Shown: piece after piece, positions 7,391 to 62,789 of the stretch
Layout of the letters: every line of letters starts with the position of its first letter
Position numbering within the stretch: the stretch's first letter is position 1
Source: Octopus sinensis
Taxonomy: Eukaryota
Length of the DNA: 64,000 nucleotides
Direction: 5' to 3'
NCBI RefSeq assembly: GCF_006345805.1
Contig: NC_042999.1
Coordinates: 9,424,001-9,488,000 of the forward strand
Notes under the pieces: model-generated
Databases searched by the model: none
Told to the model about the DNA's origin: nothing
Seen by the model: only the letters and a program-made list of their open reading frames with translations
Made by a program: the position numbers and the translations under genes

Positions 7391-8453
7391 GAATAAACTG
7401 CACTGTTTTATACAAGATCATTATGATATTTCTGAACAATATTGCGGAAGTAGTTAGTCCTTTATTATCAAATTTTATACTGTAGTTATTGCAGTATATA
7501 ATCTATTATAGTGTGGTACAGTACACATAGGTGTATGCGTGTTATGATTTATTAGCTTTAAAAATTGGTTTGGCCGTTTATGTGAGATTCCTGAGTTAGA
7601 TGTTCTACCTTCAACATCACTTGAAATAGAGATGTCCTTGGTGCAATAGGAGTGATGGCTTTCTAGTTGTCTGTGGCTGAAGAACGCCGGAGTGTAGTTG
7701 AGGAAAGAGATGGAGTTAGACAAGTGGGTGGCGGAGTCACAGTAGCTGGAAGTCGTTTGTTATTGCTAGCTTTGTAAATAAGATAAGTGATGCAATGAGT
7801 GGAGTTTACATTTATGTAGACGAGTACTGTTAGCGCCAAGTTTAAATAAAGAGCGTACCCGAGATAGCGGAGGCGGGTGTTGGGCAATAAGTTAGGAATT
7901 TGCCTCGCGGAAACAGTCCGCCATTTTGTTAGTCTTAATCTGAGGTCGATAAGGATTACGTTTTGGTATTTTCTTTGCATGATACTATTTATTAAATCTG
8001 AAAGAGATTTTGATGTTTCTTGCGAGGGTCATTTTGCCAATAAGAAACAAGCTCTGGTTACGTTTCGCTTCTTTTATTATTATTGGTCAACCAGTTTACT
8101 AACTAAATGTTTGATATATCGTTACTCAATCAATGAAGCAGTAAGATATCGAGACAGACCCTGAGTAAAAAGGGTTTGTATGAGGTCGCGAATGATGACA
8201 AAAGGAATCTCAGGAGCCCAGCTCATTTATTGATTGACCAAACTATTAAACAGTCGATTAGTTAATCTGTTTACTTGTTCTCAGAGAATAATATTAAAAG
8301 AACTGAACTAGAACCACTGCATGTGTTTTTTATTGGCATAATGACCCTCCAAAGACACTACGAAATAGAATTATTATTTTCTATTTCTTTCTAAACAGCA
8401 CGGAGATAAATTATTTACATTTGATGAATATTTGTCCTTATCTTGTCTGTTAT

Positions 8454-8500
8454 CACAACGTTTCGGCTGTTATACCCTCCAGCCTTCTTCAGGTGTCTTG
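8454..8500 (-). ncRNA. Hammerhead motif in the downstream pLTR (CUGAAGA core, weakened stem I)
   Basis: Reverse complement reads GACAC CTGAAGA A GGCTG...CAGCC GAAACGTT GTGAT. Confidence 0.6.
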
Positions 8501-8671
8501 GGGAAATTTCGAACCCGAGTTCTCATTCCTAAGGTATTTTTCGATGTTATTATTATTATTATTATTATTGTTATTATTATTATCATTCAGGTCACTGCAT
8601 GGAATCGAACTCGGAATCTTGGGGTTAGTAGCCCGTGCTCTTAACCACTACGCCATATGCCCGTGGGCTAA

Positions 8672-8890
8672 ACGGTTGTAATGGATCCTCTCACAGACGA
8701 GGGAATATCCTGCCCTTTCTGCTGCTCTTCTAGCTTTATATGAATCCACTGGGGTCATTATATTCAAGCCAGGTGGTATTAGCGTTGAGTCTCTACATCT
8801 ACACAGGAAAATTAGATGGTTTGAAAGACGAGCTAGTTTTTGATGGAGTTTCTCTATAAGTCTCCATTGAAGTCTAATGTCGGTTCCGAA
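8672..8890 (-). pseudogene. Penelope/Poseidon-type ORF N-terminal fragment (73 codons, no stop)
   Basis: Manual translation: FGTDIRLQWRLIEKLHQKLARLSNHLIFLCRCRDSTLIPPGLNIMTPVDSYKARRAAERAGYSLVCERIHYNR. It fits the PLE N-terminal pattern EK..KLAR..NHL.F..RCR...IP.GL...PV...A....A...L..ERI. It is absent from the ORF track because there is no early start codon. Confidence 0.8.
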
Positions 8891-9287
8891 CCGATTAGAT
8901 AATACAGTTCTATATTTACGAGATGAGGAATTATATACATTATTTACATTTGAAGGATATTTGTCCTCAACTTGTTGTTAACACAACGTTTTGGCTGATA
9001 TACCCTCCACCTTTCATCAGGTGTCTTTGGGAAATTTCGAAACTGGGTTCTCATTCCTAAGGGATTTTTCGATGTTATTATTATTAATATTATTATTCAG
9101 GTCACTGCTTGGAATCGAACTCGGAATCTTGGGTTTAGTAGCCTACGGGCATATGGTGTAGTGGTTAAGAGCTCGGGCTACCTATCCCAAGATTCCGAGT
9201 TCGATTCCAAGCTGGGACCTGAATGATAATAATATTAACATCGAAAAATACCTTAGGAATGAGAACCCAGGTTCGAAATTTCCCCAA

Positions 9288-9333
9288 GACACCTGATGAA
9301 GGCTGGAGGGTATATCAGCCGAAACGTTGTGTT
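9288..9333 (+). ncRNA. Minimal type I hammerhead ribozyme motif with intact core
   Basis: GACAC CTGATGA A GGCTG-gagggtatat-CAGCC GAAA CG T T | GTGTT. Stem I is GACAC/GTGTT, stem II is 5 bp, stem III is the palindrome ACGT. Predicted cleavage after 9328. Confidence 0.75.
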
Positions 9334-9753
9334 AACAACAAACAAGATGAGGACAAATATATGTCAAATGTAAATAATGTAAATAATGTACCTAATTCCT
9401 CATCTCATCGATATAGAACTGCAGTACGATGAGATTTCAGAGAGATTTGACTGCTTCTTCTACCGGTTCGAGTGACCTCATAAAGAGTCTCCCCGTAGGC
9501 TTCTGGCATGTGTGCTTGTAGGAGGAGATGAGGGAAGTCTATACCGGGCAGTTCATGCAGAGACATGGTTTCCATTTTTTACTAGTGCAGTTAGAGACTA
9601 ATAATAACTTTTTGGCAATGAAACAATTCCGTTCCTTTCAGTTCATCTACGTGAGGCATCCAGCAGGTTTTGTCCAATGACATATGTTTCTAATGCGATA
9701 CACGTTAACAATGTCGGTACTACCCTCTAAGGAATATTAATTATATACATATA

Positions 9754-10717: not shown

Positions 10718-11052
10718 GAGACCCCCTTCGGTATTGACTGACCATGGGATTGCACCTAGAAAGTTCCCCTCTCAGGCACAAGTCCGAGCAAGGTTGTTTA
10801 TGGAAGACCAGCAGTCGCCCATGCATTCCAGCTCCCCTCTCCACGCCACCAGTGTTATCCAAGGGAAAGGCAAAGAGGCCGATACAGCTTGGCACCAGTG
10901 ATGTCGCAACTCATTTCTACAGCTGAGTGAACTGGAGCAACGTGAAATAAAGTGTCTTGCTCAAGAACACAACACGCAGGCCGGTCCGGGATTCGAGCTC
11001 ACAACCTCACGATCGTAAGCTCCGCGCTCTAACCGCTGAGCCATGCGCCTTC
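10718..11052 (-). mobile_element. tRNA-derived CORE-type SINE family C
   Basis: rc head GAAGGCGCATGGCTCAGCGGTTAGAGC...CTCGAATCCC and core-like GTGTTCTTGAGCAAGACACTT. Homologous to 51362-51733. Confidence 0.85.
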
Positions 11053-11147: not shown

Positions 11148-11420
11148 CACGTGATCACGTTACCGACCAGACCATCAGATGTTGTTACACATCGCTGTTC
11201 ACAATGCGTTCGCATTGTTTTAGCAGGCCAACAGAAGAAAGAGTGAGAGAAAGAGTGGTGAAAGAGTACAGCTGGGATCACCCCCCCCCCCGCCGGAGCC
11301 TCGTGGAGCTTTTAGGCGTTTTCGCCCAATAAACACACACAACGCCCGGTCTGGGAATCGAAACTGCGATCCTGCGACCGCGGGTCCGCTGCCCTAACCA
11401 CTAGGCCATTGCGCCTCCAC
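11148..11420 (-). mobile_element. tRNA-derived SINE family D (OR1-like head) with a variant tail
   Basis: rc head GTGGAGGCGCAATGGCCTAGTGGTTAGGGCAGCGG is shared with 37565-37952 and 62206-62425. Confidence 0.85.
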
Positions 11421-16993: not shown

Positions 16994-17377
16994 ACTTTCT
17001 ATTCCTGAGCGTTATACTAATACATCTGTTTATTTTGTACACCACCTGTCTTCGTCTTTTGTTTTTTCGTAAACTCTTCCTTTATTCATACGTAATTACA
17101 TGGATAACTGATTCTCAATGTAATTATATAACTTTAGGGATCTAGAGACCAATATCATTTAAGGAATAGTGCTCTGAATATAAATCTGTAGGATATGCGG
17201 AATGGTAGAAATCTGTGTTCATTTACGCTCGCAAAAGTGAACTATGAATCTTGCTTCTTAGGATCCAGCTTTCAAACGACGGCCACCAGAGCCATCCCGC
17301 TTTTCCTCATGTCTATATTTCTCTTGATAGTTATCCCTAATTATCTGTGACCCTCTATGCTACTCAGTGAGAAGAAG

Positions 17378-17812
17378 AAGAAGAAAAGAAGAAGAAGAAA
17401 AAGAAGAAAAAGAAACAGAAAAAGAAAAAGAAGGAAAAGAAGAAAAAGAAAAAGAAGAAGAAAAAGAAACAGAAGAAGAAAAGAAGAAAAAGAAAAAGAA
17501 GAAGAAGAAAAAGAAACAGAAGAAGAAAAGAAGAAAAAGAAGAAAAAGAAGAAAAAAGAAAGAAAAGAAGAAAAAGAAGAAGAAAAGAAGAAGAAAAAGA
17601 AACAGAAGAAGAAAAGAAGAAGAAAAAGAAGAAACAGAAGAAGAAAAGAAAAAGAAACAGAAGAAAAAGAAGAAGAAAAAGAAGAAACAGAAGAAAAAAA
17701 AAAGAAGAAGCAGAAGAAAAAAGAAGAAGAAAGAAAAGAAAAAAGAAGAAGAAAAAAGAAGAAGAAAAAGAAAAAGAAAAAGAAAAAGAAGAAAAGAAGA
17801 AGAGAAAGAGAC
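17378..17812. repeat. Degenerate (GAA)n/(GAAAAA)n polypurine tract, about 435 bp
   Basis: Almost entirely A/G, with occasional AAACAG units. It accounts for the K/R/E-rich and F/S/L-rich pseudo-ORFs. Confidence 0.95.
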
Positions 17813-18754
17813 TCAGCAAAACAGAGAAAGATACAGATTAATGGGAGACTGAACGAGTAAGAAAAACACTTTCACGTCAAACAAACGTACTGCTGCCATC
17901 ATTGAGATTTTTCTTCGACTCCTTCTCCTTCTTCTCTCTGTCTATATTACATTTTTTGATGGGTGCTTTTCATCCTTTATCTCTCTTCAGCTTTCCCAAT
18001 ATGCAGAGAGTCACAGAAAGAGCATAGAGGGAAAATTATATAAAGATTTAAAAGAGACTTAACGACGAAGGAACACAGAATATGACGACACACTTATTTT
18101 ACACCATCATTGGTCAACGCGCCTCTGTTTATAGCTACCTTTTCTTTCGTCTCGCATTCTCTATCTAACTCTGTTCTCTATTCGAGAGAGAGAGGAGGAA
18201 GAGGAGGAGAGCAGGGACAGAGAAAGACATGCAGAGAAAAAGAGGAAGAAGGAAAAGTGACATTACAACCTCATTTAAGCTTTCTGTCTCTCTACATTTG
18301 CGTGCTTTGAAGAATTTTTACTATTTCTCAAAATTAATGTTATACAAAATTCAGGAGACGAATAATAATAATATAATAATAATACGTAGGATTCTGTAAC
18401 TTTGTAGTTTCGGAATACGAGGTGGTCAAACAGAGAAATCTCACACATACACACAAACACAGAGTCATAATTAAGGAAATAAATCTCTCTCTCAGAGTGT
18501 TTATGGGTAAGTATGTGTGTATGTATGCATCTGTGTGTAGACATGAATTATTAGTGCTTCCACGCGCAAAATCAGCGGACTCAGTAGATATGAAACTGAA
18601 ATATATGTGAAATGATATAGCACGTTATTGGTAAGACATCATCATAAAGAGATCTCGTGTTCTTAATATGTCTGGAATGCATCTGGGTTGTTATACAGAG
18701 TTTCCAAAATTCCATTTTAGGTGAAGAAAGTTTTAAGTGACTTAACTCCTCCAC

Positions 18755-25934: not shown

Positions 25935-27207
25935 TTAGGTCATCCCATAAATAATGCGGTTGTTTATACATTTTTTATTTTTCAAAATTAAGATAAAGTT
26001 ATTTTTTAATCTAAAATATACTCTCCTTCATGTTCTACAGTGCTCTTCCGTCTATCTGGTAAATTTGCTAGGCCCTCTTTTCTAAAATTCACTTGTCCGT
26101 GACGAAAAAATACTCTTCCAGTACTGTTCTGACATCGTCTACAGAATTCATATTTTTTTTCCCTCCAAATGATTTTGAAGACTACGGAATAAATGATAAT
26201 TAGATGGGGCAATGTCTGACGAATATGGTGGGTGAGGTATCGTTTTCCATTCAAACTGCTCCAGCTTTTCGAATGTCATCCTCGCTCTATGTAACCGAGC
26301 ATTATTCTCATGGGAGAACACCTTTCGTCTTCAAACCAAAATTGGTCGTTTTTCCTCTAGTGCTGATTAAAGCCACTCTAGCTGCTTACAGTAGATCTCC
26401 TTTGTTATTGTTTGGTTTAGGTTTAAAAGTTCTAAGTGAACTAAACCTTTCATATTTCCCCAAACAGATAACAGTACCTTACGTGGGTGAAGACCTTCTG
26501 TAGTCTGGGGTGCCAGTGTTTCTCCTTTCTCCACCCACTGTCTTCGGCGCTTGACATTTTAATATAGATTCCATTTCTCGTTATCAGTCACTATTTGGTC
26601 CAAAGAAGGTTCATTCGTGAGATATGGCAGCAAAGAAGAGCACATATTCACTCTGCGCGTGATAAGACCCGCAAAGTTTGTGAGGAACCCATTGACCCAA
26701 TTTGCTGACATTTCCGATGGCTAGCAGGTGTCGGTGAATGGTTGAATGACCAAATCCAAACTTCTCTGCTAGTTCCTCAACAGTTACAATAGGATTTTGT
26801 TCCATCAGGGTTTGCAGGATGTCCTCGTCGAACTCTACGGATCTTCCAGGACGAGGCTCGTCTTCTAGGTTGTAGTTTCCACCTCGGAATTTCTGGAACC
26901 ACCGTTGACAGAGGTTTACGCTTATTGTCCGATCCCCATATACTGCATTAATATTCCTCGCACTTTCCGTTGTGTTGAACTCATAAAGCAAAATATGTCG
27001 AATATGCCCCTTTGTCACTTCCATTATAACATTGATAATATAACTATTAAAATCAAACCACACTCTTCGAAACTTGCACTAAGAATAAATACAAGGTGAA
27101 ATTACTACCTGCTTTTATAGCAAGTCAATGCAGGTCGTTGATCCTGTCCTCCTCCGGTTCTTAGTTCAGGCAATTGAAAAAACTGCATTATTTATGGGAT
27201 GACCCAG
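25935..27207 (-). mobile_element. Full-length mariner (DD34D-type) transposon with a decayed transposase (27024 to 26006)
   Basis: 25-bp TIRs (TTAGGTCATCCCATAAATAATGCGG and counterpart, 3 mismatches). TA on the left, CA on the right. Motifs MEVTKGHIRHILLYEF, PRPGRS, WVPHKL, HPPYSSDIAPSNYHLFRSLQ and EGEYILD. Several stops and frameshifts. Confidence 0.95.
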
Positions 27208-37564: not shown

Positions 37565-37952
37565 GGAGGAAGCACTCCGTCGGTTACGACGACGTGGGTT
37601 CCGGTTGATCCGAATCAACGGAACAGCCTGCTCGTGAAATTAACGTGTAAGTGGCTGAGCACTCCACAGACACGTGTATCCTTAACGTAGTTCTCGGGGA
37701 TATTCAGCGTGACACAGAGAGTGACAAGGCCGGCCCTTTGAAGTGCAGGTACAACAGAAACAGGAAGTAAGAGTGAGAGAAAGTTGTGGTGAAAGAGTAC
37801 AGCAGGGATCACCACCATCCCCTGCCGGAGCTTCGTGGAACTTTTAGGTGTTTTCGCTCAATAAACACTCACAACGCCCGGTCTGGGAATCGAAACCGCG
37901 ATCCTATGACCGCGAGTCCGCTGCCCTAACCACTGGGCAATTGCGCCTCCAC
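37565..37952 (-). mobile_element. Full-length family D (OR1-like) SINE
   Basis: tRNA-like head with A and B boxes. 13-bp TSD AGTCGGGGAATTA at 37552-37564 and 37953-37965. Confidence 0.92.
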
Positions 37953-51361: not shown

Positions 51362-51733
51362 AACTCGCCTTCGTCGGTCACGAGTGGCCATGGGTGCACC
51401 CAAGAGGTTGCCCGCCGGGGTACAAATCTGGGCAGAATGTCGCCTTACCGGCGAAGGCACAACCTAGGGTTGTATTTATGGAAAACCAGCAGTCACCCAT
51501 GCATACCAACGTCCGCTCTCCACACTCCACAGCTGTTAACCACGGGAAAGGCAAAGGGGCCGATACAACTTGGTACCAGTGACGTCGCAACTCATTTCTA
51601 CAGATGAGTGAACTGGAGCAACGTGAATTAAAGTGTCTTGCTCAAGAACACTGCACGCAGCCCGATCCGTGAATCGAACTCACAACCTCACAATTGTAAG
51701 CTCGACGCTCTAACCACTGAGCCATGCGCCTTC
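51362..51733 (-). mobile_element. Family C SINE
   Basis: Homologous to 10718-11052. TSD GTTGGTGATAATA at 51349-51361 and 51737-51749. Confidence 0.88.
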
Positions 51734-55514: not shown

Positions 55515-56434
55515 ATTTTAATGATAAATCTTTCAATTTTTGGCAGAGGTCCAGCAATTTAGAGGGAGGATGTTAGTCGATAACACCGAGTCCATTATGT
55601 GACTGGTACTTTATTTCATCGACCTAATGACAGAATCAAATTTGGTTTCAGTGGGGTTTGAACTTAGAATATATAGAGCCAGAAGACCTATCGCAAAGCA
55701 TTTTTTCCAACATTTTAACTATTCTGCCAAACCGCTGCGTTATAACGTTACTATATGTCTTCCATCTCCAAACGTTTTTAATTTAGACAAAAGGCCAACG
55801 ACATCGAGAAGAGATTTTATCAGAATCAGTATTTGACTGGGATTTTCTTTTATTCCTAATTAAATGCGTAACTAATAATACGCAAATCTAGTGGTTCTGC
55901 CCGCCCAACGCTTAATACAATAGCAACAAGAAATTCGATGGAAATAAAGATTAAGAAAAGTCGGTCATTGGGCAAACGCAGAATCTGTTGAAAAGAAGAG
56001 GAAAGTTTTGACCAACTCATAATTGAACACAGAAGACTAGCATAAGAAAAATGAAAAATTAAAGAATATCTAATATCAGATATGACAATGCCCCAGTATG
56101 GCATTAGCCGTGATATCTGCAATAACCTGGTGAACTAAGTTGAGATAGGTTCGGTATCAAAGTCAGACTGAATTTGTACCGGTAATCAACAGTCAGCAAT
56201 TCTAGAAAATCTGCGATCTTCACATGATACAGCATGGAAAATGTCTTGCACTGAAATGCCATTTTCAGTGATAGACTCTCGAACGAAAGAAAAAGAAAAA
56301 TCTAATCCTTGCTGTTCTTTTCCTTAGTATCAACTTCATTGATCTCTACCAAAATATTGCCATTTATTAATTTTATTTCGGTGTTTACTGTGGAATAAAC
56401 GATACACGTTTTTCTGTTCAACAATACTTGTTTT

Positions 56435-56923
56435 ACAGTTCTATATTTAAGAGATGAGGTATTATTTACATTTGACGGATATTTGTCCTCATCTTGTTTG
56501 TTGTTAACACAACGTGTTAGCTGATATACCCTCCAGCCGTCATCAGGTGTCTTGGCGAAATTTTGAACCTGGGTTCTCATTCCTAAGGTATTTTTTGATG
56601 TTATTATTGTGATTATCATTATTATTCAGGTCACTGCCTGGAATCGAACTCGGAATCTTGGGGTTCGCAGCCCGCGATCTTAACCACTACAGGCATATGG
56701 CGCAGTGGTTAAGAGAGTGTGCTACTAACCCCAAGATTCTGAGTTCGATTCCAGTCAGTGACCTCAACAACAACAACATCGAAAAATACCTTAGGAATGA
56801 GACCCAGTTCGAGATTTCCCCAAGACACCTGAAGGAGGCTGGATGGTACATCAGCCGAAACGTTGTTTTAACAACAAACAAGATGGGGACAGATACCCAT
56901 CAAATGTAAATAATGTAAACAAC
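56435..56923. mobile_element. Head-to-head pair of tRNA-headed PLE pLTRs, inserted as one unit
   Basis: Minus arm 56435-56690 and plus arm 56691-56917 are homologous to the 8411-9421 units. Flanked by the direct repeat TACTTGTTTT (56425-56434 and 56924-56933). Both hammerhead cores are mutated. Confidence 0.88.
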
Positions 56924-57593
56924 TACTTGTTTTCTTTAATAGATAAAATCTACCCAAATCTTGCCTAATGACTTTAAAACTCCCCCGACAGCCTAATTCT
57001 AATTCAATTAAACGAAAGATTCTTGTGAAGAAAATAAAAATAAAACAGTTATTTATACGTTATTCCCTACTATTGTATCCCATTTACCATGTATCTGCTT
57101 ACCTCAACTTACGTCGGTAATTAATTCCAAGACATACAATTTAACACGAAACACGTCATAACACGAAAACTTTACTTTTAAAAATTTATTAGTTGTTTTA
57201 ATAAACAGTTTGTAAATCTGTTTAAATAAATGATTTTTACATATTTTCACATTGGCTTTGATTATCCACATGCGTACTGTTGCTTGCTTTGTTCTCGATT
57301 TTTAGGCAGTTTTAACTCTCACCAGCCTTCCTGGTGAGTGTCATTATTGAGTTTTCCCAAAACTAGTGTGAAAAACCGTTAGCTAAAATCGGCTGAAATA
57401 CTTTCCTCGGACTCTTCTTCCTTTTCCCTTCTCTTTGAAGTTTTCCTCCCTCCGACAAAGAGCCATGCTCGAAACGTCACACTCATTTTCCCAATTAAAT
57501 CGTTCACTTGGCGTCAATCAAATATATTTACAGGGTACGTGATGCTCCTTTTTCCTGTTGTTTTTATTCCTGATTTAACCTCTGTGTATATAA

Positions 57594-61787: not shown

Positions 61788-62087
61788 ATATGTGTGTGTG
61801 TATAATAAGTGTATACGAGTGGGTATATATTTATAAAAAAGAAGTTTGAAAACGCCACTATATAAGATAAATTTTAATTTTCTTAGAAATTTTACGTTTC
61901 GGTTCTTCTTGAAAAAACGAACCGTATCAAAAATATTTTTAAAAGTGTAATAAAAGAAGTTCATAATTGTTTCTTACTAGTCTCAACAGAATCCACGGGT
62001 GGTTTTTGTTGTGGAGAGCATAATAGCTGTCTTGTGTGTTGATTAAAGTTGGGCAAGTGACCAGTGGCCGAAATAGCAGTAGTGTGT

Positions 62088-62198
62088 ATATCACGTTGAA
62101 AGCACCGGTTCTCGTCCGATCACCGAAGTTAAGCAACATCGAGCCTAGTTAGTACTTAGATGGGTGACCGCTTGGGAACCCTAGGTGCCGTAAGCATT
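62088..62198 (+). rRNA. 5S: 5S rRNA copy lacking the first ~10 nt (probable pseudogene)
   Basis: ATATCACGTTGAAAGCACCGGTTCTCGTCCGATCACCGAAGTTAAGCAAC...TAGTACTTAGATGGGTGACCGCTTGGGAA...GGTGCCGTAAGC matches invertebrate 5S. The CCTAG/CTAGG helix pairs. There is no T-run terminator. Confidence 0.93.
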
Positions 62199-62205
62199 AC
62201 CTGTT

Positions 62206-62425
62206 GTGGAGGCGCAATGGCCTAGTGGTTAGGGCAGCGGACTCGCGGTCGCAGGATCGCGGTTTCGATTCTCAGACCGGGCGTTGTGTGTGTTTATTGA
62301 GCGAAAACACCTAAAAAGCTCTACGAGGCTCCGGCAGGGGGTGGTGATCCCTGCTGTACTCTTTCACCACAATGGCGGTGCCCCAGCATGGCCACAGCTC
62401 AAGAGCTGAAACTGGAAAAACAAAA
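62206..62425 (+). mobile_element. Family D head joined to a family B-like tail
   Basis: GTGGAGGCGCAATGG...CTTTCACCACAA is followed directly by TGGCGGTGCCCCAGCATGGCCACAGCTC...GCTGAAAC. Confidence 0.85.
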
Positions 62426-62789
62426 ATATATATATATATATATATATACTTGTAAATAAATCCGGAGGCGATTAAAGCCACATTTATCTAAATAATTGAC
62501 TGAAAACTAATGAACTAACTCTAGCTAGAATCGAACCCACAAATCAACGCTAACACAGCTCCTTGCGCATCCGACTCAGCCAGAACACTCATCCATAAAT
62601 ATATATTCCGCCAAATTTTATGTATAGATACTTAACTCATATATTACATGTATAGACATGCAAACACACACACATGCATAATCTATACAAATATACATAT
62701 AGGCACAGGCGTGGCTGTGTGGTAAGTAGCTTGTTTCTCAACTAAATGGTTCTGGTTTCAGTCCCACTGCGTAGCCTCGGACCGCTGTT

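What the first reader, a model, noticed from the sequence alone, without database searches (positions are those of the whole stretch)
8411..9421. Penelope-like element whose pseudo-LTR begins with a tRNA-derived Pol III promoter
Seen: the same ~260-bp unit occurs three times here and twice at 56.4-56.9 kb. It consists of a tRNA-like head (A box TGGCGTAGTGG, B box GAGTTCGATTCC, resembling tRNA-Arg(ACG) in GGGC..TGGCG, CTAC, AAGATTCC and GTTCGA), then (AAT)n, a hammerhead, and an end at ATAGAACTG. The copy ending at 8904 runs in frame into a 73-codon PLE N-terminal ORF, then jumps to another full unit. The sense strand of the 9144-9421 copy has no TTTT run. Known: PLEs have direct and 5'-inverted pLTRs, and these carry minimal hammerheads. 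Inference: this family captured a tRNA head into its pLTR, giving a Pol III-transcribable, self-cleaving, PLE-mobilised SINE-like unit. SINEs are normally paired with LINEs, and I do not know of a described PLE case. A weak possible TSD is CAGCACGGAGAT (8396-8407) versus CAGTACGATGAGAT (9422-9435).
Basis: partly seen in the sequence, partly recalled or inferred. Interest (0 to 1): 0.92.

Follow-up and report, generated by a model that had tools for sequence, protein, structure and literature searches.

The report
tRNA-headed hammerhead unit of a Penelope element
Five old copies of a ~260-base mobile unit join a tRNA-like promoter head to the ribozyme-bearing start of a Penelope-like retrotransposon gene, and the same layout occurs in intact Penelope elements elsewhere, so this class of retrotransposon may use a tRNA-type promoter and make its own SINE-like short copies.

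Summary
Five copies of one ~230-278-nt unit lie in two loci (8408-9421 and 56436-56917). Each is a 72-nt tRNA-related head with consensus A and B boxes in tRNA register, an AAT-type repeat, a Penelope-type minimal hammerhead, and one of two fixed 3' ends ~34 nt apart.

The 8672-8992(-) peptide is homologous to N-termini of RT + GIY-YIG Penelope-like element (PLE) proteins. The hammerhead sits inside that reading frame and shows covariation.

The copies carry PLE insertion marks: the optional 30-40-nt "tail", head-to-head pairs with an inverted 5'-truncated arm, and a 15-16-bp target duplication at 56.4 kb.

New here: a tRNA-like head sits just upstream of the hammerhead and ORF start in three distant PLE lineages from other samples. 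In one of them (L003) it lies between tandem intact ORFs. So the head is part of the PLE itself, not a chance SINE neighbour.

Full copies begin 0-5 nt upstream of head +1, which fits an RNA that starts at the head. Pol III transcription and self-cleavage remain untested.

The closest precedents are the schistosome Sm-alpha SINE-like ribozyme elements and retrozymes. I found no paper describing a tRNA-like module in a PLE pLTR. Verdict: real, a new variant of a known kind, fairly interesting.

The parts
8408..8662 (-). Copy c1. It is full at the 5' end (head +1 at 8662) and has the short 3' end without a tail. A box 8645-8655, B box 8601-8611, hammerhead segment 8444-8502 with an intact core (CUGAAGA...GAAA).
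8663..8895 (-). Continuation of c2 into the PLE ORF N-terminus (about 73 further codons, ...LSNRFGTDIRLQWRLIEKLHQKLARLSNHLIFLCRCRDSTLIPPGL...ERIHYNR). It ends in a short junction (8663-8671) onto the head of c1.
   Evidence: tblastn 8672-8992, E 2e-29 to P0001; E 2e-12 to the 825-aa PLE protein P0018
8896..9143 (-). Copy c2. It is 5'-truncated at about head position 30 and forms the inverted arm next to c3. Its 3' end passes the ATAGAACTG point (8896-8904) and reads on into the ORF. Hammerhead segment 8972-9030, with a damaged core (G12 to A).
9144..9146 (+). A 3-nt filler (TAC) between the inverted arm c2 and the 5' end of c3.
9147..9421 (+). Copy c3, the complete unit. tRNA-related head 9147-9218 (A box 9154-9164, B box 9198-9208). 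AAT-type repeat at about 9223-9240. Likely ORF start ATG at about 9261. Minimal hammerhead 9283-9341, with the predicted cleavage after 9328. The 34-nt tail is at about 9388-9421 and ends ATAGAACTG. There is no T4 run on the sense strand.
56420..56434 (.). Left target-site duplication of the 56.4-kb insertion (AACAATACTTGTTTT).
56436..56690 (-). Copy c4, the inverted arm. It is 5'-truncated at head position 13 and has the long 3' end with tail (CAGTTCTAT at 56436-56444). Hammerhead segment 56498-56556, with a damaged core.
56691..56917 (+). Copy c5. It is full at the 5' end (head +1 at 56691) and has the short 3' end without a tail. A box 56698-56708, B box 56742-56752, hammerhead segment 56819-56877 (A9 to G).
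56918..56933 (.). Right target-site duplication (AACAACTACTTGTTTT).

Best explanation
**What it is.** The five units are old insertions of a short, non-autonomous form of a canonical (RT + GIY-YIG) Penelope-like element.

**Layout, 5' to 3'.**
1. A 72-nt tRNA-related head that no longer folds as a tRNA but keeps consensus Pol III A and B boxes in tRNA register.
2. An AAT-type repeat.
3. The PLE leader and the first ~55 codons of the PLE ORF, with a PLE-type minimal hammerhead written into those codons (CCUGAUGAAGG reads P-D-E-G; CCGAAACGU reads P-K-R).
4. One of two fixed 3' ends 34 nt apart inside the ORF.

**Shown.**
- The unit is homologous to the pLTR/ORF-start part of PLEs.
- Its 3' ends, inverted pairing and TSD are the marks of PLE target-primed reverse transcription: two internal RT start sites (the 'tail') and priming from both nicked strands, so two cDNAs meet head to head.
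- The tRNA-like head belongs to the PLE. It lies between tandem intact ORFs in L003 and upstream of the hammerhead/ORF start in L007 and L008.

**Inferred.**
- The head acts as an internal Pol III promoter. It would produce a short RNA that starts at or a few nt before head +1 and contains every cis signal the PLE RT needs, namely the ORF-start region with the RT initiation sites.
- The PLE protein would then copy this RNA in trans, as a LINE copies a SINE.
- The hammerhead needs a second copy to form helix III (palindrome ACGU). A monomeric short transcript would therefore stay uncleaved and keep its head.
For: **Repeat family and constant junction.**

**PLE homology.**
- HMMER finds 220 proteins at E <= 0.001.
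- tblastn places the match at 8672-8992(-).

**Hammerhead.**
- It has every feature Cervera & de la Pena 2014 list for PLE min-HHRs. [quoted passage not shown]
- On 11 sequences, 84.5% of cells pair against 20-58% when partners are slid. Seven of 10 pairs change on both sides, and 0 of 500 shuffles reach the observed score.
- Helix II compensatory changes alter the encoded residues (W to H, Q to W in L001).

**Tail.**
- c2, c3 and c4 end at ATAGAACTG, while c1 and c5 end about 34 nt earlier.
- This matches the optional 30-40-bp tail between two RT start sites (PMC11167929; PMC8557442).

**Insertion structure.** An inverted 5'-truncated arm sits beside a full copy at both loci, with the tail at one end only. 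The TSD at locus B is significant.

**Head.**
- A and B boxes lie 44 nt apart.
- The head aligns end to end with tRNAs at 65-73% identity, scoring 20 against a shuffle maximum of 9.
- A head profile also finds L003 254-338, L007 137-209 and L008 487-561, each at E about 1e-15.
- In L003 the head sits between tandem copies that are 97% identical.
- Across the four lineages the B box is invariant in 8 of 11 columns and the A box in 5 of 12, against 10 of 50 elsewhere.

**5' ends.** c1, c3, c5 and the L007 copy all start 0-5 nt upstream of head +1.

**T-run avoidance.**
- No T4 run occurs in c1, c3 or c4.
- L003 has no T4+ run in 2633 nt (4.5 expected, P 0.006).
- Its Phe codons are TTT/TTC = 1/24, yet it has 18 A4+ runs.
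- Headless PLEs L004, L006 and L009 have 18, 4 and 8 T4+ runs in their ORFs.
Against: - No transcript data exist, so Pol III use is inferred from sequence alone.
- The head has no cloverleaf, and neither ARAGORN nor Rfam reports it.
- The window holds no full-length PLE, and the source genome could not be searched. The copy-number excess of short units over full elements, which defines a SINE-like lifestyle, is therefore not measured. Five short copies against zero RT fragments in 64 kb is only a hint.
- c2 shows that some template RNAs ran at least ~480 nt from the head into the ORF, so not all templates were short.
- Three related PLEs with enough upstream DNA (L002, L005, L006) and L009 have no head, so the module is not universal.
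- T-run depletion rests on one full-length element. It is weaker under codon-order shuffling (P 0.07) and could reflect host codon bias.
- Box conservation would also appear if the heads were captured independently from different tRNAs.
- The locus A TSD is not significant.
Confidence: 0.72

Rival explanations
1. These are ordinary PLE pLTR-plus-tail fragments. The element is transcribed by Pol II from a pLTR promoter whose start happens to lie at the tRNA-like module. The module is then a relic, a TFIIIC-binding or chromatin element, or part of a Pol II promoter, and there is no separate SINE-like short RNA.
For: - PLE pLTRs are known to hold promoters, and insertions are normally 5'-truncated and tandem or inverted.
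- c2 shows a template that reached ORF codon ~130.
- The head has no tRNA fold.
- Translating the 825-aa ORF of L003 would normally need a Pol II mRNA.
Against: - Consensus A and B boxes at exact tRNA spacing are kept in four lineages whose proteins are only 35-44% identical, while the rest of the head drifts.
- Four independent 5' ends lie within 5 nt of head +1, where a tRNA-type promoter would start.
- L003 shows strand-specific purging of T runs.
Confidence: 0.2
2. The tRNA-like module is an RNA processing signal rather than a promoter. [quoted passage not shown]
For: A fixed 5' end at head +1 is also what RNase P cleavage of a longer transcript would give.
Against: - The acceptor and T stems do not pair. 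For example, only 3 of the 5 T-stem positions (49-53 with 61-65) pair.
- ARAGORN finds nothing at 90% thresholds. At 70-80% thresholds it calls shuffled sequences at 6-31%.
- Rfam tRNA gives no hit.
Confidence: 0.05
3. The association is by chance or secondary. Either an unrelated tRNA-derived SINE inserted next to PLE fragments, or these PLEs target tRNA genes, so the head is flanking DNA and not part of the element.
For: The window is rich in other tRNA-like SINE heads, so nested insertions are plausible in principle.
Against: - The junction is the same in five copies from two insertion events.
- The locus B TSD encloses both heads.
- The head diverges in step with the body.
- The same order is found in L003, L007 and L008 from unrelated samples. 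In L003 the head lies between tandem ORFs.
Confidence: 0.02

Closest known systems
Penelope-like elements (canonical EN+ clades) with minimal type I hammerheads in their pLTRs (Cervera & de la Pena 2014; Craig et al. 2021; Frangieh et al. 2024)
   Same: - The N-terminal ORF is homologous.
- The min-HHR has the bulged nucleotide, the G10.1-C11.1 pair and the palindromic helix III.
- The hammerhead overlaps the ORF start, as in the Anolis element PAc.
- There are two 3' ends 30-40 nt apart (the tail).
- An inverted 5'-truncated copy sits next to a full copy.
- TSDs are present.
   Different: - The window copies have no RT or EN.
- A tRNA-related module with A and B boxes sits upstream of the hammerhead.
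- The core PLE papers I could read mention no such module. 'tRNA' occurs 0 times in PMC3846280 and PMC4209133, and once in PMC8557442, where it refers to the Sec tRNA.
Sm-alpha / Sj-alpha SINE-like retroposons of Schistosoma (Ferbeyre 1998; Laha 2000)
   Same: A short non-coding repeat with a Pol III-type promoter followed by a type I hammerhead, and regarded as SINE-like.
   Different: - As described in the papers I read, Sm-alpha has a canonical hammerhead and occurs largely in tandem arrays that cleave to unit length.
- Those descriptions report no continuity with a PLE ORF.
- Here the hammerhead is the minimal PLE type, the copies are dispersed inverted pairs, and the unit runs in frame into a PLE ORF.
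- I could not compare the sequences, because none was available.
Metazoan non-LTR retrozymes (Cervera & de la Pena 2020; Li, Clavereau & Pollet, bioRxiv 2026)
   Same: They are non-autonomous hammerhead-bearing repeats argued to derive from PLE pLTRs and to be mobilised by PLEs. Goubert et al. [quoted passage not shown]
   Different: - Retrozymes are tandem repeats with classical type I hammerheads that are expressed as circRNAs, and no promoter head has been described for them.
- The units here are not tandem, and they carry a tRNA-like head and a defined linear 5' end.
TRIMp3: Cassandra, Helenus, Ajax (Kojima 2024, PMC10886601)
   Same: A small-RNA-gene-derived Pol III promoter is built into the terminal repeat of a retroelement class that is not LINE-dependent. 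The promoter boxes are conserved and the RNA fold is lost.
   Different: - Those are LTR-retrotransposon derivatives with PBS/PPT and 4-5-bp TSDs.
- Their autonomous partners do not carry the promoter.
- Here the partner class is PLE, and an apparently autonomous PLE (L003) carries the module itself.
Classical tRNA-derived SINEs (SINE2)
   Same: - A tRNA-related head with A and B boxes.
- A length of 230-280 nt.
- A 3' part shared with an autonomous retroelement.
- TSDs.
   Different: - The 3' part comes from the 5' end of the partner's ORF region, where the PLE RT initiates, not from a LINE 3' tail.
- There is no A-rich or simple-repeat 3' end.
- The unit carries an internal ribozyme.
- Insertions form inverted dimers.

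Membership tests
Penelope-like element (product of PLE retrotransposition) | ORF with a PLE-type RT (DKG motif) and a GIY-YIG endonuclease | tested here: not met
   The window has only the N-terminal ~130 codons (8672-8992-) and no RT/EN fragment anywhere in the 64 kb. Homologues of that N-terminus do carry DKG, RVT_1 and GIY-YIG. The copies are therefore derivatives, not autonomous members.
Penelope-like element (product of PLE retrotransposition) | Minimal type I hammerhead in the pLTR / ORF-start region | tested here: met
   The core is CUGAUGA...GAAA with the bulged nucleotide, G10.1-C11.1 and the ACGU palindrome. Covariation supports helices I and II (criteria).
Penelope-like element (product of PLE retrotransposition) | Optional 30-40-bp tail, that is two alternative 3' ends inside the ORF start | tested here: met
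   Three copies end at ATAGAACTG and two end about 34 nt earlier. Definition.
Penelope-like element (product of PLE retrotransposition) | Inverted 5'-truncated copy next to the 5' end of a full copy, with a TSD | tested here: met
   The c2/c3 and c4/c5 pairs show it. The TSD at locus B has P < 0.001, while the one at locus A is not significant.
tRNA-derived SINE (SINE2) | 5' head derived from a tRNA, with internal A and B boxes | tested here: met
   The boxes are at tRNA positions 8 and 52. The source tRNA cannot be assigned.
tRNA-derived SINE (SINE2) | Transcription by RNA polymerase III | not testable with these tools
   Only indirect evidence exists: 5' ends at head +1 and no T4 run in c1, c3 or c4.
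tRNA-derived SINE (SINE2) | 3' tail shared with, and mobilisation by, a LINE | tested here: not met
   The 3' part is the ORF-start region of a PLE, not a LINE tail, and there is no A-rich end.
Functional tRNA gene | Cloverleaf detectable by tRNA finders | tested here: not met
   ARAGORN gives 0 genes at default and at 90% thresholds. Rfam gives no tRNA hit at E <= 10.
Hammerhead ribozyme, type I | Conserved core plus helices I and II, with helix III in cis or by dimerisation | tested here: met
   The core is intact in c1 and c3 and mutated in c2, c4 and c5. The helices covary. The AACGUU palindrome gives a 6-bp trans duplex of -5.7 kcal/mol. Rfam hammerhead models do not score it, as expected without a cis helix III.
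Hammerhead ribozyme, type I | Self-cleavage activity | not testable with these tools
   This needs in vitro transcription of monomer and dimer constructs, with and without the PLE protein.
Non-LTR retrozyme / Sm-alpha-type tandem ribozyme repeat | Head-to-tail tandem units, each with a hammerhead, processed to unit length or to circles | tested here: not met
   The copies are dispersed and inverted, not tandem. c2 and c1 are in direct orientation but separated by an ORF fragment.

The most novel reading that the evidence does not exclude
A subset of autonomous Penelope-like elements is itself driven by a tRNA-derived internal Pol III promoter in the pLTR. The whole 2.7-kb element would then be purged of T-run terminators, as in L003, and the same promoter would spin off short head-plus-hammerhead-plus-RT-start RNAs that amplify as the first tRNA-SINEs partnered with PLEs rather than LINEs. 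That would make these the first autonomous protein-coding retrotransposons transcribed by Pol III.
Probability: 0.15. Interest if true: 0.9.

Novelty: new variant of a known kind. Interest (0 to 1): 0.7.

Why it matters
**Extends a rule.** SINEs are defined as Pol III-promoted parasites of LINEs. LTR elements have an analogue in TRIMp3/Cassandra. A tRNA-headed short element built from, and marked by the integration signatures of, a Penelope-like element would extend the rule to the third retrotransposon class.

**Bears on open PLE questions.**
- What promotes PLE transcription.
- How dispersed minimal hammerheads, thousands per invertebrate genome and mostly not inside full PLEs, were spread.

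**Gives a concrete link.** It provides a sequence-level connection between Sm-alpha-type ribozyme SINEs, retrozymes and PLEs.

**Practical value.** Such units are likely annotated as tRNA-SINEs of unknown partner or as 'unknown' repeats. Recognising the PLE tail signature would improve annotation.

Tried and rejected
- **Rfam.** The gathering scan of the whole window and the E <= 10 scan of 8300-9550 gave no tRNA or hammerhead. A MIR2606 'hit' at 9038-9275 is just the inverted c2/c3 hairpin. An E <= 1 scan of six related loci also gave no tRNA.
- **ARAGORN.** It found nothing at default or 90% thresholds. At 70-80% thresholds it calls shuffles at 6-31%, so those calls were discarded.
- **Word-indexed protein search.** The search with the peptide found nothing. 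The exhaustive HMMER search did.
- **Metagenome scans.** Both came back empty: a head-plus-body DNA pattern and an N-terminal protein alignment. A first alignment was too diverse to use. I therefore could not collect more copies of this family, or a full-length element of the same genome.
- **Exact-protein look-ups.** Look-ups of two window ORFs, meant to identify the source genome, found nothing. The organism stays unidentified. My guess of a cephalopod or mollusc rests only on repeat flavour and is not evidence.
- **L002.** An apparent head remnant (z 3.6) was rejected. That stretch is homologous to the coding leader of the unit (S-R-V-R-Q-K-P versus T-Q-V-R-N-F-P), not to the head, and the head profile does not hit L002.
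- **Assignment to tRNA-Arg(ACG).** Not supported as unique.
- **Common versus independent origin of the four heads.** Unresolved, because they are as similar to each other as to generic tRNAs or to an unrelated SINE head in the window.
- **Literature.** Searches for a described tRNA-like or Pol III module in PLEs, and for the unit's own sequence strings, found nothing. The library lacks Ferbeyre 1998 and Lunse 2017, and Repbase and Dfam could not be consulted.
Full report
**1. What is in the sequence**

The window is eukaryotic in character: 37.7% G+C, a 5S rRNA gene and many microsatellites. blastn of 9144-9421 against the window finds five copies and nothing else of note. After alignment and reading the junctions, the copies are as follows.

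| Copy | Coordinates | Strand |
|---|---|---|
| c1 | 8408-8662 | - |
| c2 | 8896-9143 | - |
| c3 | 9147-9421 | + |
| c4 | 56436-56690 | - |
| c5 | 56691-56917 | + |

The order of modules is the same in every copy:
- a 72-nt head;
- an AAT-type repeat of variable length;
- a conserved leader (ACATCGAAAAATACCTTAGGAATGAGAACCCAGGTTCGAAATTTCCCCAAGACAC);
- the hammerhead region;
- a 3' segment.

**2. The head**

- c1, c3 and c5 carry an A box (TGGCGTAGTGG, or a one-base variant). The B box (AGTTCGATTCC) follows exactly 44 nt later. These are tRNA positions 8 and 52.
- In that register TTCGA falls at 54-58 and a CTACTAA loop at 32-38.
- The head does not fold as a tRNA.
  - ARAGORN finds nothing at default or 90% thresholds. 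Its calls at lower thresholds are no better than on shuffles.
  - Rfam's tRNA model gives no hit at E <= 10.
- The head does align end to end with real tRNA sequences at 65-68% identity. The global score is 20, against a shuffle mean of 4.8 and maximum of 9.
- The head is best described as a tRNA-related module that keeps the promoter boxes and has lost the fold. Old SINE heads look the same.

**3. The hammerhead**

Rfam reports none. That is expected for a motif without a cis helix III. By sequence, c3 reads:

GACAC-CUGAUGA-A-GGCUG-(10-nt loop)-CAGCC-GAA-ACGU-U|GUGUU

It has the traits Cervera & de la Pena (2014, PMC4209133) list as diagnostic of PLE minimal hammerheads:
- the G10.1-C11.1 pair;
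- a short helix I;
- a palindromic 15.2-16.2 stretch, so that helix III forms only between two copies.

I aligned the five window copies with the same region of six related loci (A6) and counted pairs.
- 84.5% of cells pair, against 20-58% when the 3' partners are slid.
- Seven of ten pairs show changes on both sides.
- 13 cells show double changes, against 4.4 in shuffles.
- 0 of 500 shuffles reach the observed score.

In L001 two helix II pairs are changed compensatorily (GGCUG/CAGCC to GGCCA/UGGCC), at the cost of changing the encoded residues (W to H, Q to W). That argues for selection on the RNA. The AACGUU palindrome can form a 6-bp trans duplex.

Only c1 and c3 keep an intact core. c2, c4 and c5 have inactivating changes. 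Cleavage itself is untested.

**4. The peptide**

- On the minus strand, c2 does not stop at ATAGAACTG. It reads on in the same frame to 8651.
- An exhaustive HMMER search with window:8651-8977(-) finds 220 proteins at E <= 0.001 and 16 at E <= 1e-10.
- The long hits are canonical PLE proteins. [quoted passage not shown]
- tblastn places the homology at 8672-8992(-), with E 2e-29 to P0001 and about 1e-12 to the full-length proteins. The window holds no other PLE coding fragment.
- The hammerhead lies inside this frame: CCUGAUGAAGG encodes P-D-E-G and CCGAAACGU encodes P-K-R. Many homologues have the matching PEEG/PDDG...PKR(C) motif.
- This mirrors the Anolis element PAc, whose ORF starts within the hammerhead (PMC11167929).

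**5. Marks of PLE integration**

- **Tail.** c2, c3 and c4 end at ...ATATAGAACTG. c1 and c5 end about 34 nt earlier, at ...AAATGTAAATAAT(GTAAA). Both points lie inside the ORF. Two alternative ends 30-40 bp apart are the PLE 'tail'. Frangieh et al. 2024 explain it by two internal RT initiation sites about 110 nt into the ORF and call it unique to PLEs. Craig et al. 2021 add that the tail is often present at one end only. The spacing here, about 60 and 94 nt downstream of the hammerhead cut site, is close to that in PAc.
- **Inverted arm.** Both loci are head-to-head pairs in which an inverted 5'-truncated arm abuts a copy that is complete at its 5' end. c2 is cut at head position ~30 and c4 at position 13. 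This is the arrangement drawn for PLEs in Craig et al.. Each arm has its own 3' end at the outer edge of the insertion. That fits the finding that the PLE protein nicks and extends both DNA strands.
- **TSD.** The 56.4-kb pair is flanked by AACAATACTTGTTTT / AACAACTACTTGTTTT. None of 2000 shuffles reach this score, and for random window pairs P < 0.001. Whether that complex is one event stays open.

**6. Is the head part of the PLE?**

The source genome could not be searched. Both metagenome scans were empty, and the window's ORFs are not on record. I therefore fetched DNA for homologues of the peptide.

- **L003** (JGI metagenome contig, 2886 bp) holds tandem copies of an intact PLE. The overlap regions are 97% identical, not identical, so this is a true tandem.
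  - The previous ORF ends at about 140.
  - Then comes a 212-nt spacer.
  - The 825-aa ORF starts at 353, inside CCUGAUGA.
  - Within the spacer, 254-338 is a tRNA-like module. Its A box is TAGCTCAGTTGG and its B box is GAGTTCGAATC. It lies about 30 nt upstream of the hammerhead.
- **L007** and **L008** come from two other ENA samples. Each has a tRNA-like module (137-209 and 487-561) upstream of a PDDG-type hammerhead and ORF start. L008 also has an A-rich repeat between head and leader, as the window family does.
- A profile built from the four heads scores each at E about 1e-15. It finds none in L001, L002, L004, L005, L006 or L009. L001 and L004 have too little upstream DNA to judge.
- The proteins of the head-bearing loci are only 35-44% identical to the window peptide. 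The layout is therefore either old, with losses, or acquired repeatedly. The heads are as similar to one another (63-73%) as to generic tRNAs or to an unrelated SINE head in the window, so I cannot decide between these.
- Across the four lineages the B box is invariant in 8 of 11 columns and the A box in 5 of 12, against 10 of 50 elsewhere. This fits selection on the boxes, but independent capture would give the same pattern.

**7. Where the template RNA starts**

- c1, c3 and c5 begin at GGGCATATGG or AGGCATATGG, with at most 3 extra nucleotides. This holds whether the upstream neighbour is an inverted arm (c3, c5) or an ORF fragment (c1).
- In L007 an inverted arm (3-132) abuts a copy that starts 5 nt before head +1.
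- That makes four independent 5' ends within 0-5 nt of head +1, and none runs back into PLE 3'UTR or C-terminal coding sequence. A transcript initiated by a tRNA-type internal promoter would look like this.
- c1, c3 and c4 have no T4 run on the sense strand. The single T4 in the c2 ORF extension sits in an ATT-TTC (I-F) pair where relatives have T-F, so it is probably a later mutation.

**8. A further hint**

In L003 the 2633 nt from the head onward contain no T4+ run.

| Locus | Head | T4+ runs | Other |
|---|---|---|---|
| L003 | yes | 0 in 2633 nt (4.5 expected; P 0.006 by base shuffle, P 0.07 by codon shuffle of its ORF) | Phe TTT/TTC 1/24; 3 TTT triplets in the 2478-nt ORF; 18 A4+ runs |
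| L004 | no | 18 in ORF | |
| L006 | no | 4 in ORF | |
| L009 | no | 8 in ORF | |

Strand-specific purging of Pol III terminators over a whole autonomous element would be remarkable. It rests on one element, and host codon bias is not excluded.

**9. Mechanism proposed**

*Shown:*
- The units are the head plus the pLTR/ORF-start part of a PLE.
- They were integrated by PLE machinery.

*Inferred:*
- The head is an internal Pol III promoter.
- Its short transcript contains the region that PLE RT needs. Frangieh et al. place the required RNA within the first ~170 nt of the ORF, with initiation inside it.
- The PLE protein therefore copies it in trans, like a SINE.
- Because the hammerhead needs two copies, a monomeric transcript keeps its head. 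Kojima (PMC5786205) noted that a ribozyme downstream of a SINE head would otherwise cut the head off.
- The complex at 8.4-9.4 kb is best read as cDNAs from both nicks plus a template switch. The switch went from the 5' end of one RNA (c1) onto a longer RNA that carried head through ORF codon ~130 (c2).

**10. Comparison with what is known, and novelty**

Known:
- PLE pLTR hammerheads, tails and inverted copies.
- Sm-alpha/Sj-alpha SINE-like elements with a Pol III promoter and a hammerhead.
- Retrozymes as likely PLE-dependent non-autonomous elements.
- Pol III promoters inside LTRs of TRIMs.

Not found in any paper I could search or read: a tRNA-like A/B-box module as a constituent of PLE pLTRs, or a tRNA-headed unit running in frame into a PLE ORF.

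The library is limited, and Repbase and Dfam could not be checked. I therefore rate this a new variant of a known kind, real, and of fairly high interest (0.7). The untested Pol III step is the main uncertainty.

Noticed in passing
window 62078-62196 (+) and 62213-62274 (+): A full-length 5S rRNA match (87.8 bits) is followed 16 nt later by a tRNA-like head (GGCGCAATGGCCTAGTGGTTAGGG...GGTTTCGATTCTC, E 8e-6; sequence). This may be a 5S gene or pseudogene next to a SINE, or a composite element.
   Followed up: partly
window 51668-51727 (-), 10987-11045 (-), 11352-11412 (-), 37884-37945 (-), 62537-62582 (-): There are at least five further tRNA-like heads of other SINE families. The one at 51.7 kb continues into a body with ...CTTGAGCAAGACACTT...CCAGTTCACTCATCTGTAGAAATGAGTTGCGACGTCACTGG. 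None has a hammerhead core downstream. The window is SINE-rich.
   Followed up: partly
L003 254-2886: This full-length tandem PLE with a tRNA-like head has no T4+ run in 2633 nt. Its Phe codons are TTT/TTC = 1/24, and its 2478-nt ORF holds only 3 TTT triplets, yet 18 A4+ runs. Headless relatives L004, L006 and L009 have 18, 4 and 8 T4+ runs in their ORFs.
   Followed up: partly
L001 97-155 and L006 9-63: Two related PLEs have CAGAGGA / CAGAAGA in place of CUGANGA (U4 to A), while helices I and II stay well paired. L006 uses an AGCU palindrome instead of ACGU. This could be a core variant or inactive copies.
   Followed up: no
L005 3353-3408 (-) and 6517-6572 (+): Identical hammerhead segments in inverted orientation flank a PLE ORF in an NCBI genome assembly (GCA_029955175.1). 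This is an example of inverted pLTRs. The locus has no tRNA-like head.
   Followed up: no
L007 3-132 vs 285-412: An inverted arm, 5'-truncated inside hammerhead helix II, abuts a head-bearing copy 5 nt upstream of head +1 (91.5% identity between arms). This is the same architecture as both window loci, in an unrelated sample.
   Followed up: yes
window 26611-27063 (-): A 150-aa ORF (…HIRHILLYEFN…AVYGDRTISVNLCQRWFQKFRGGNYNLEDEPRPGRS…) reads like the N-terminal HTH part of a mariner-type transposase. This is judged by eye from memory and was not scanned.
   Followed up: no
window 9038-9275: Rfam lists a sub-threshold 'MIR2606' match (50 bits against a gathering score of 140). It is only the long hairpin formed by the inverted c2/c3 arms, not a microRNA gene.
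   Followed up: yes
window 17357-17860: Overlapping 150-167-aa 'ORFs' on both strands are made of K/E/R or S/F/L runs. This is a purine-rich simple repeat, not a gene.
   Followed up: no
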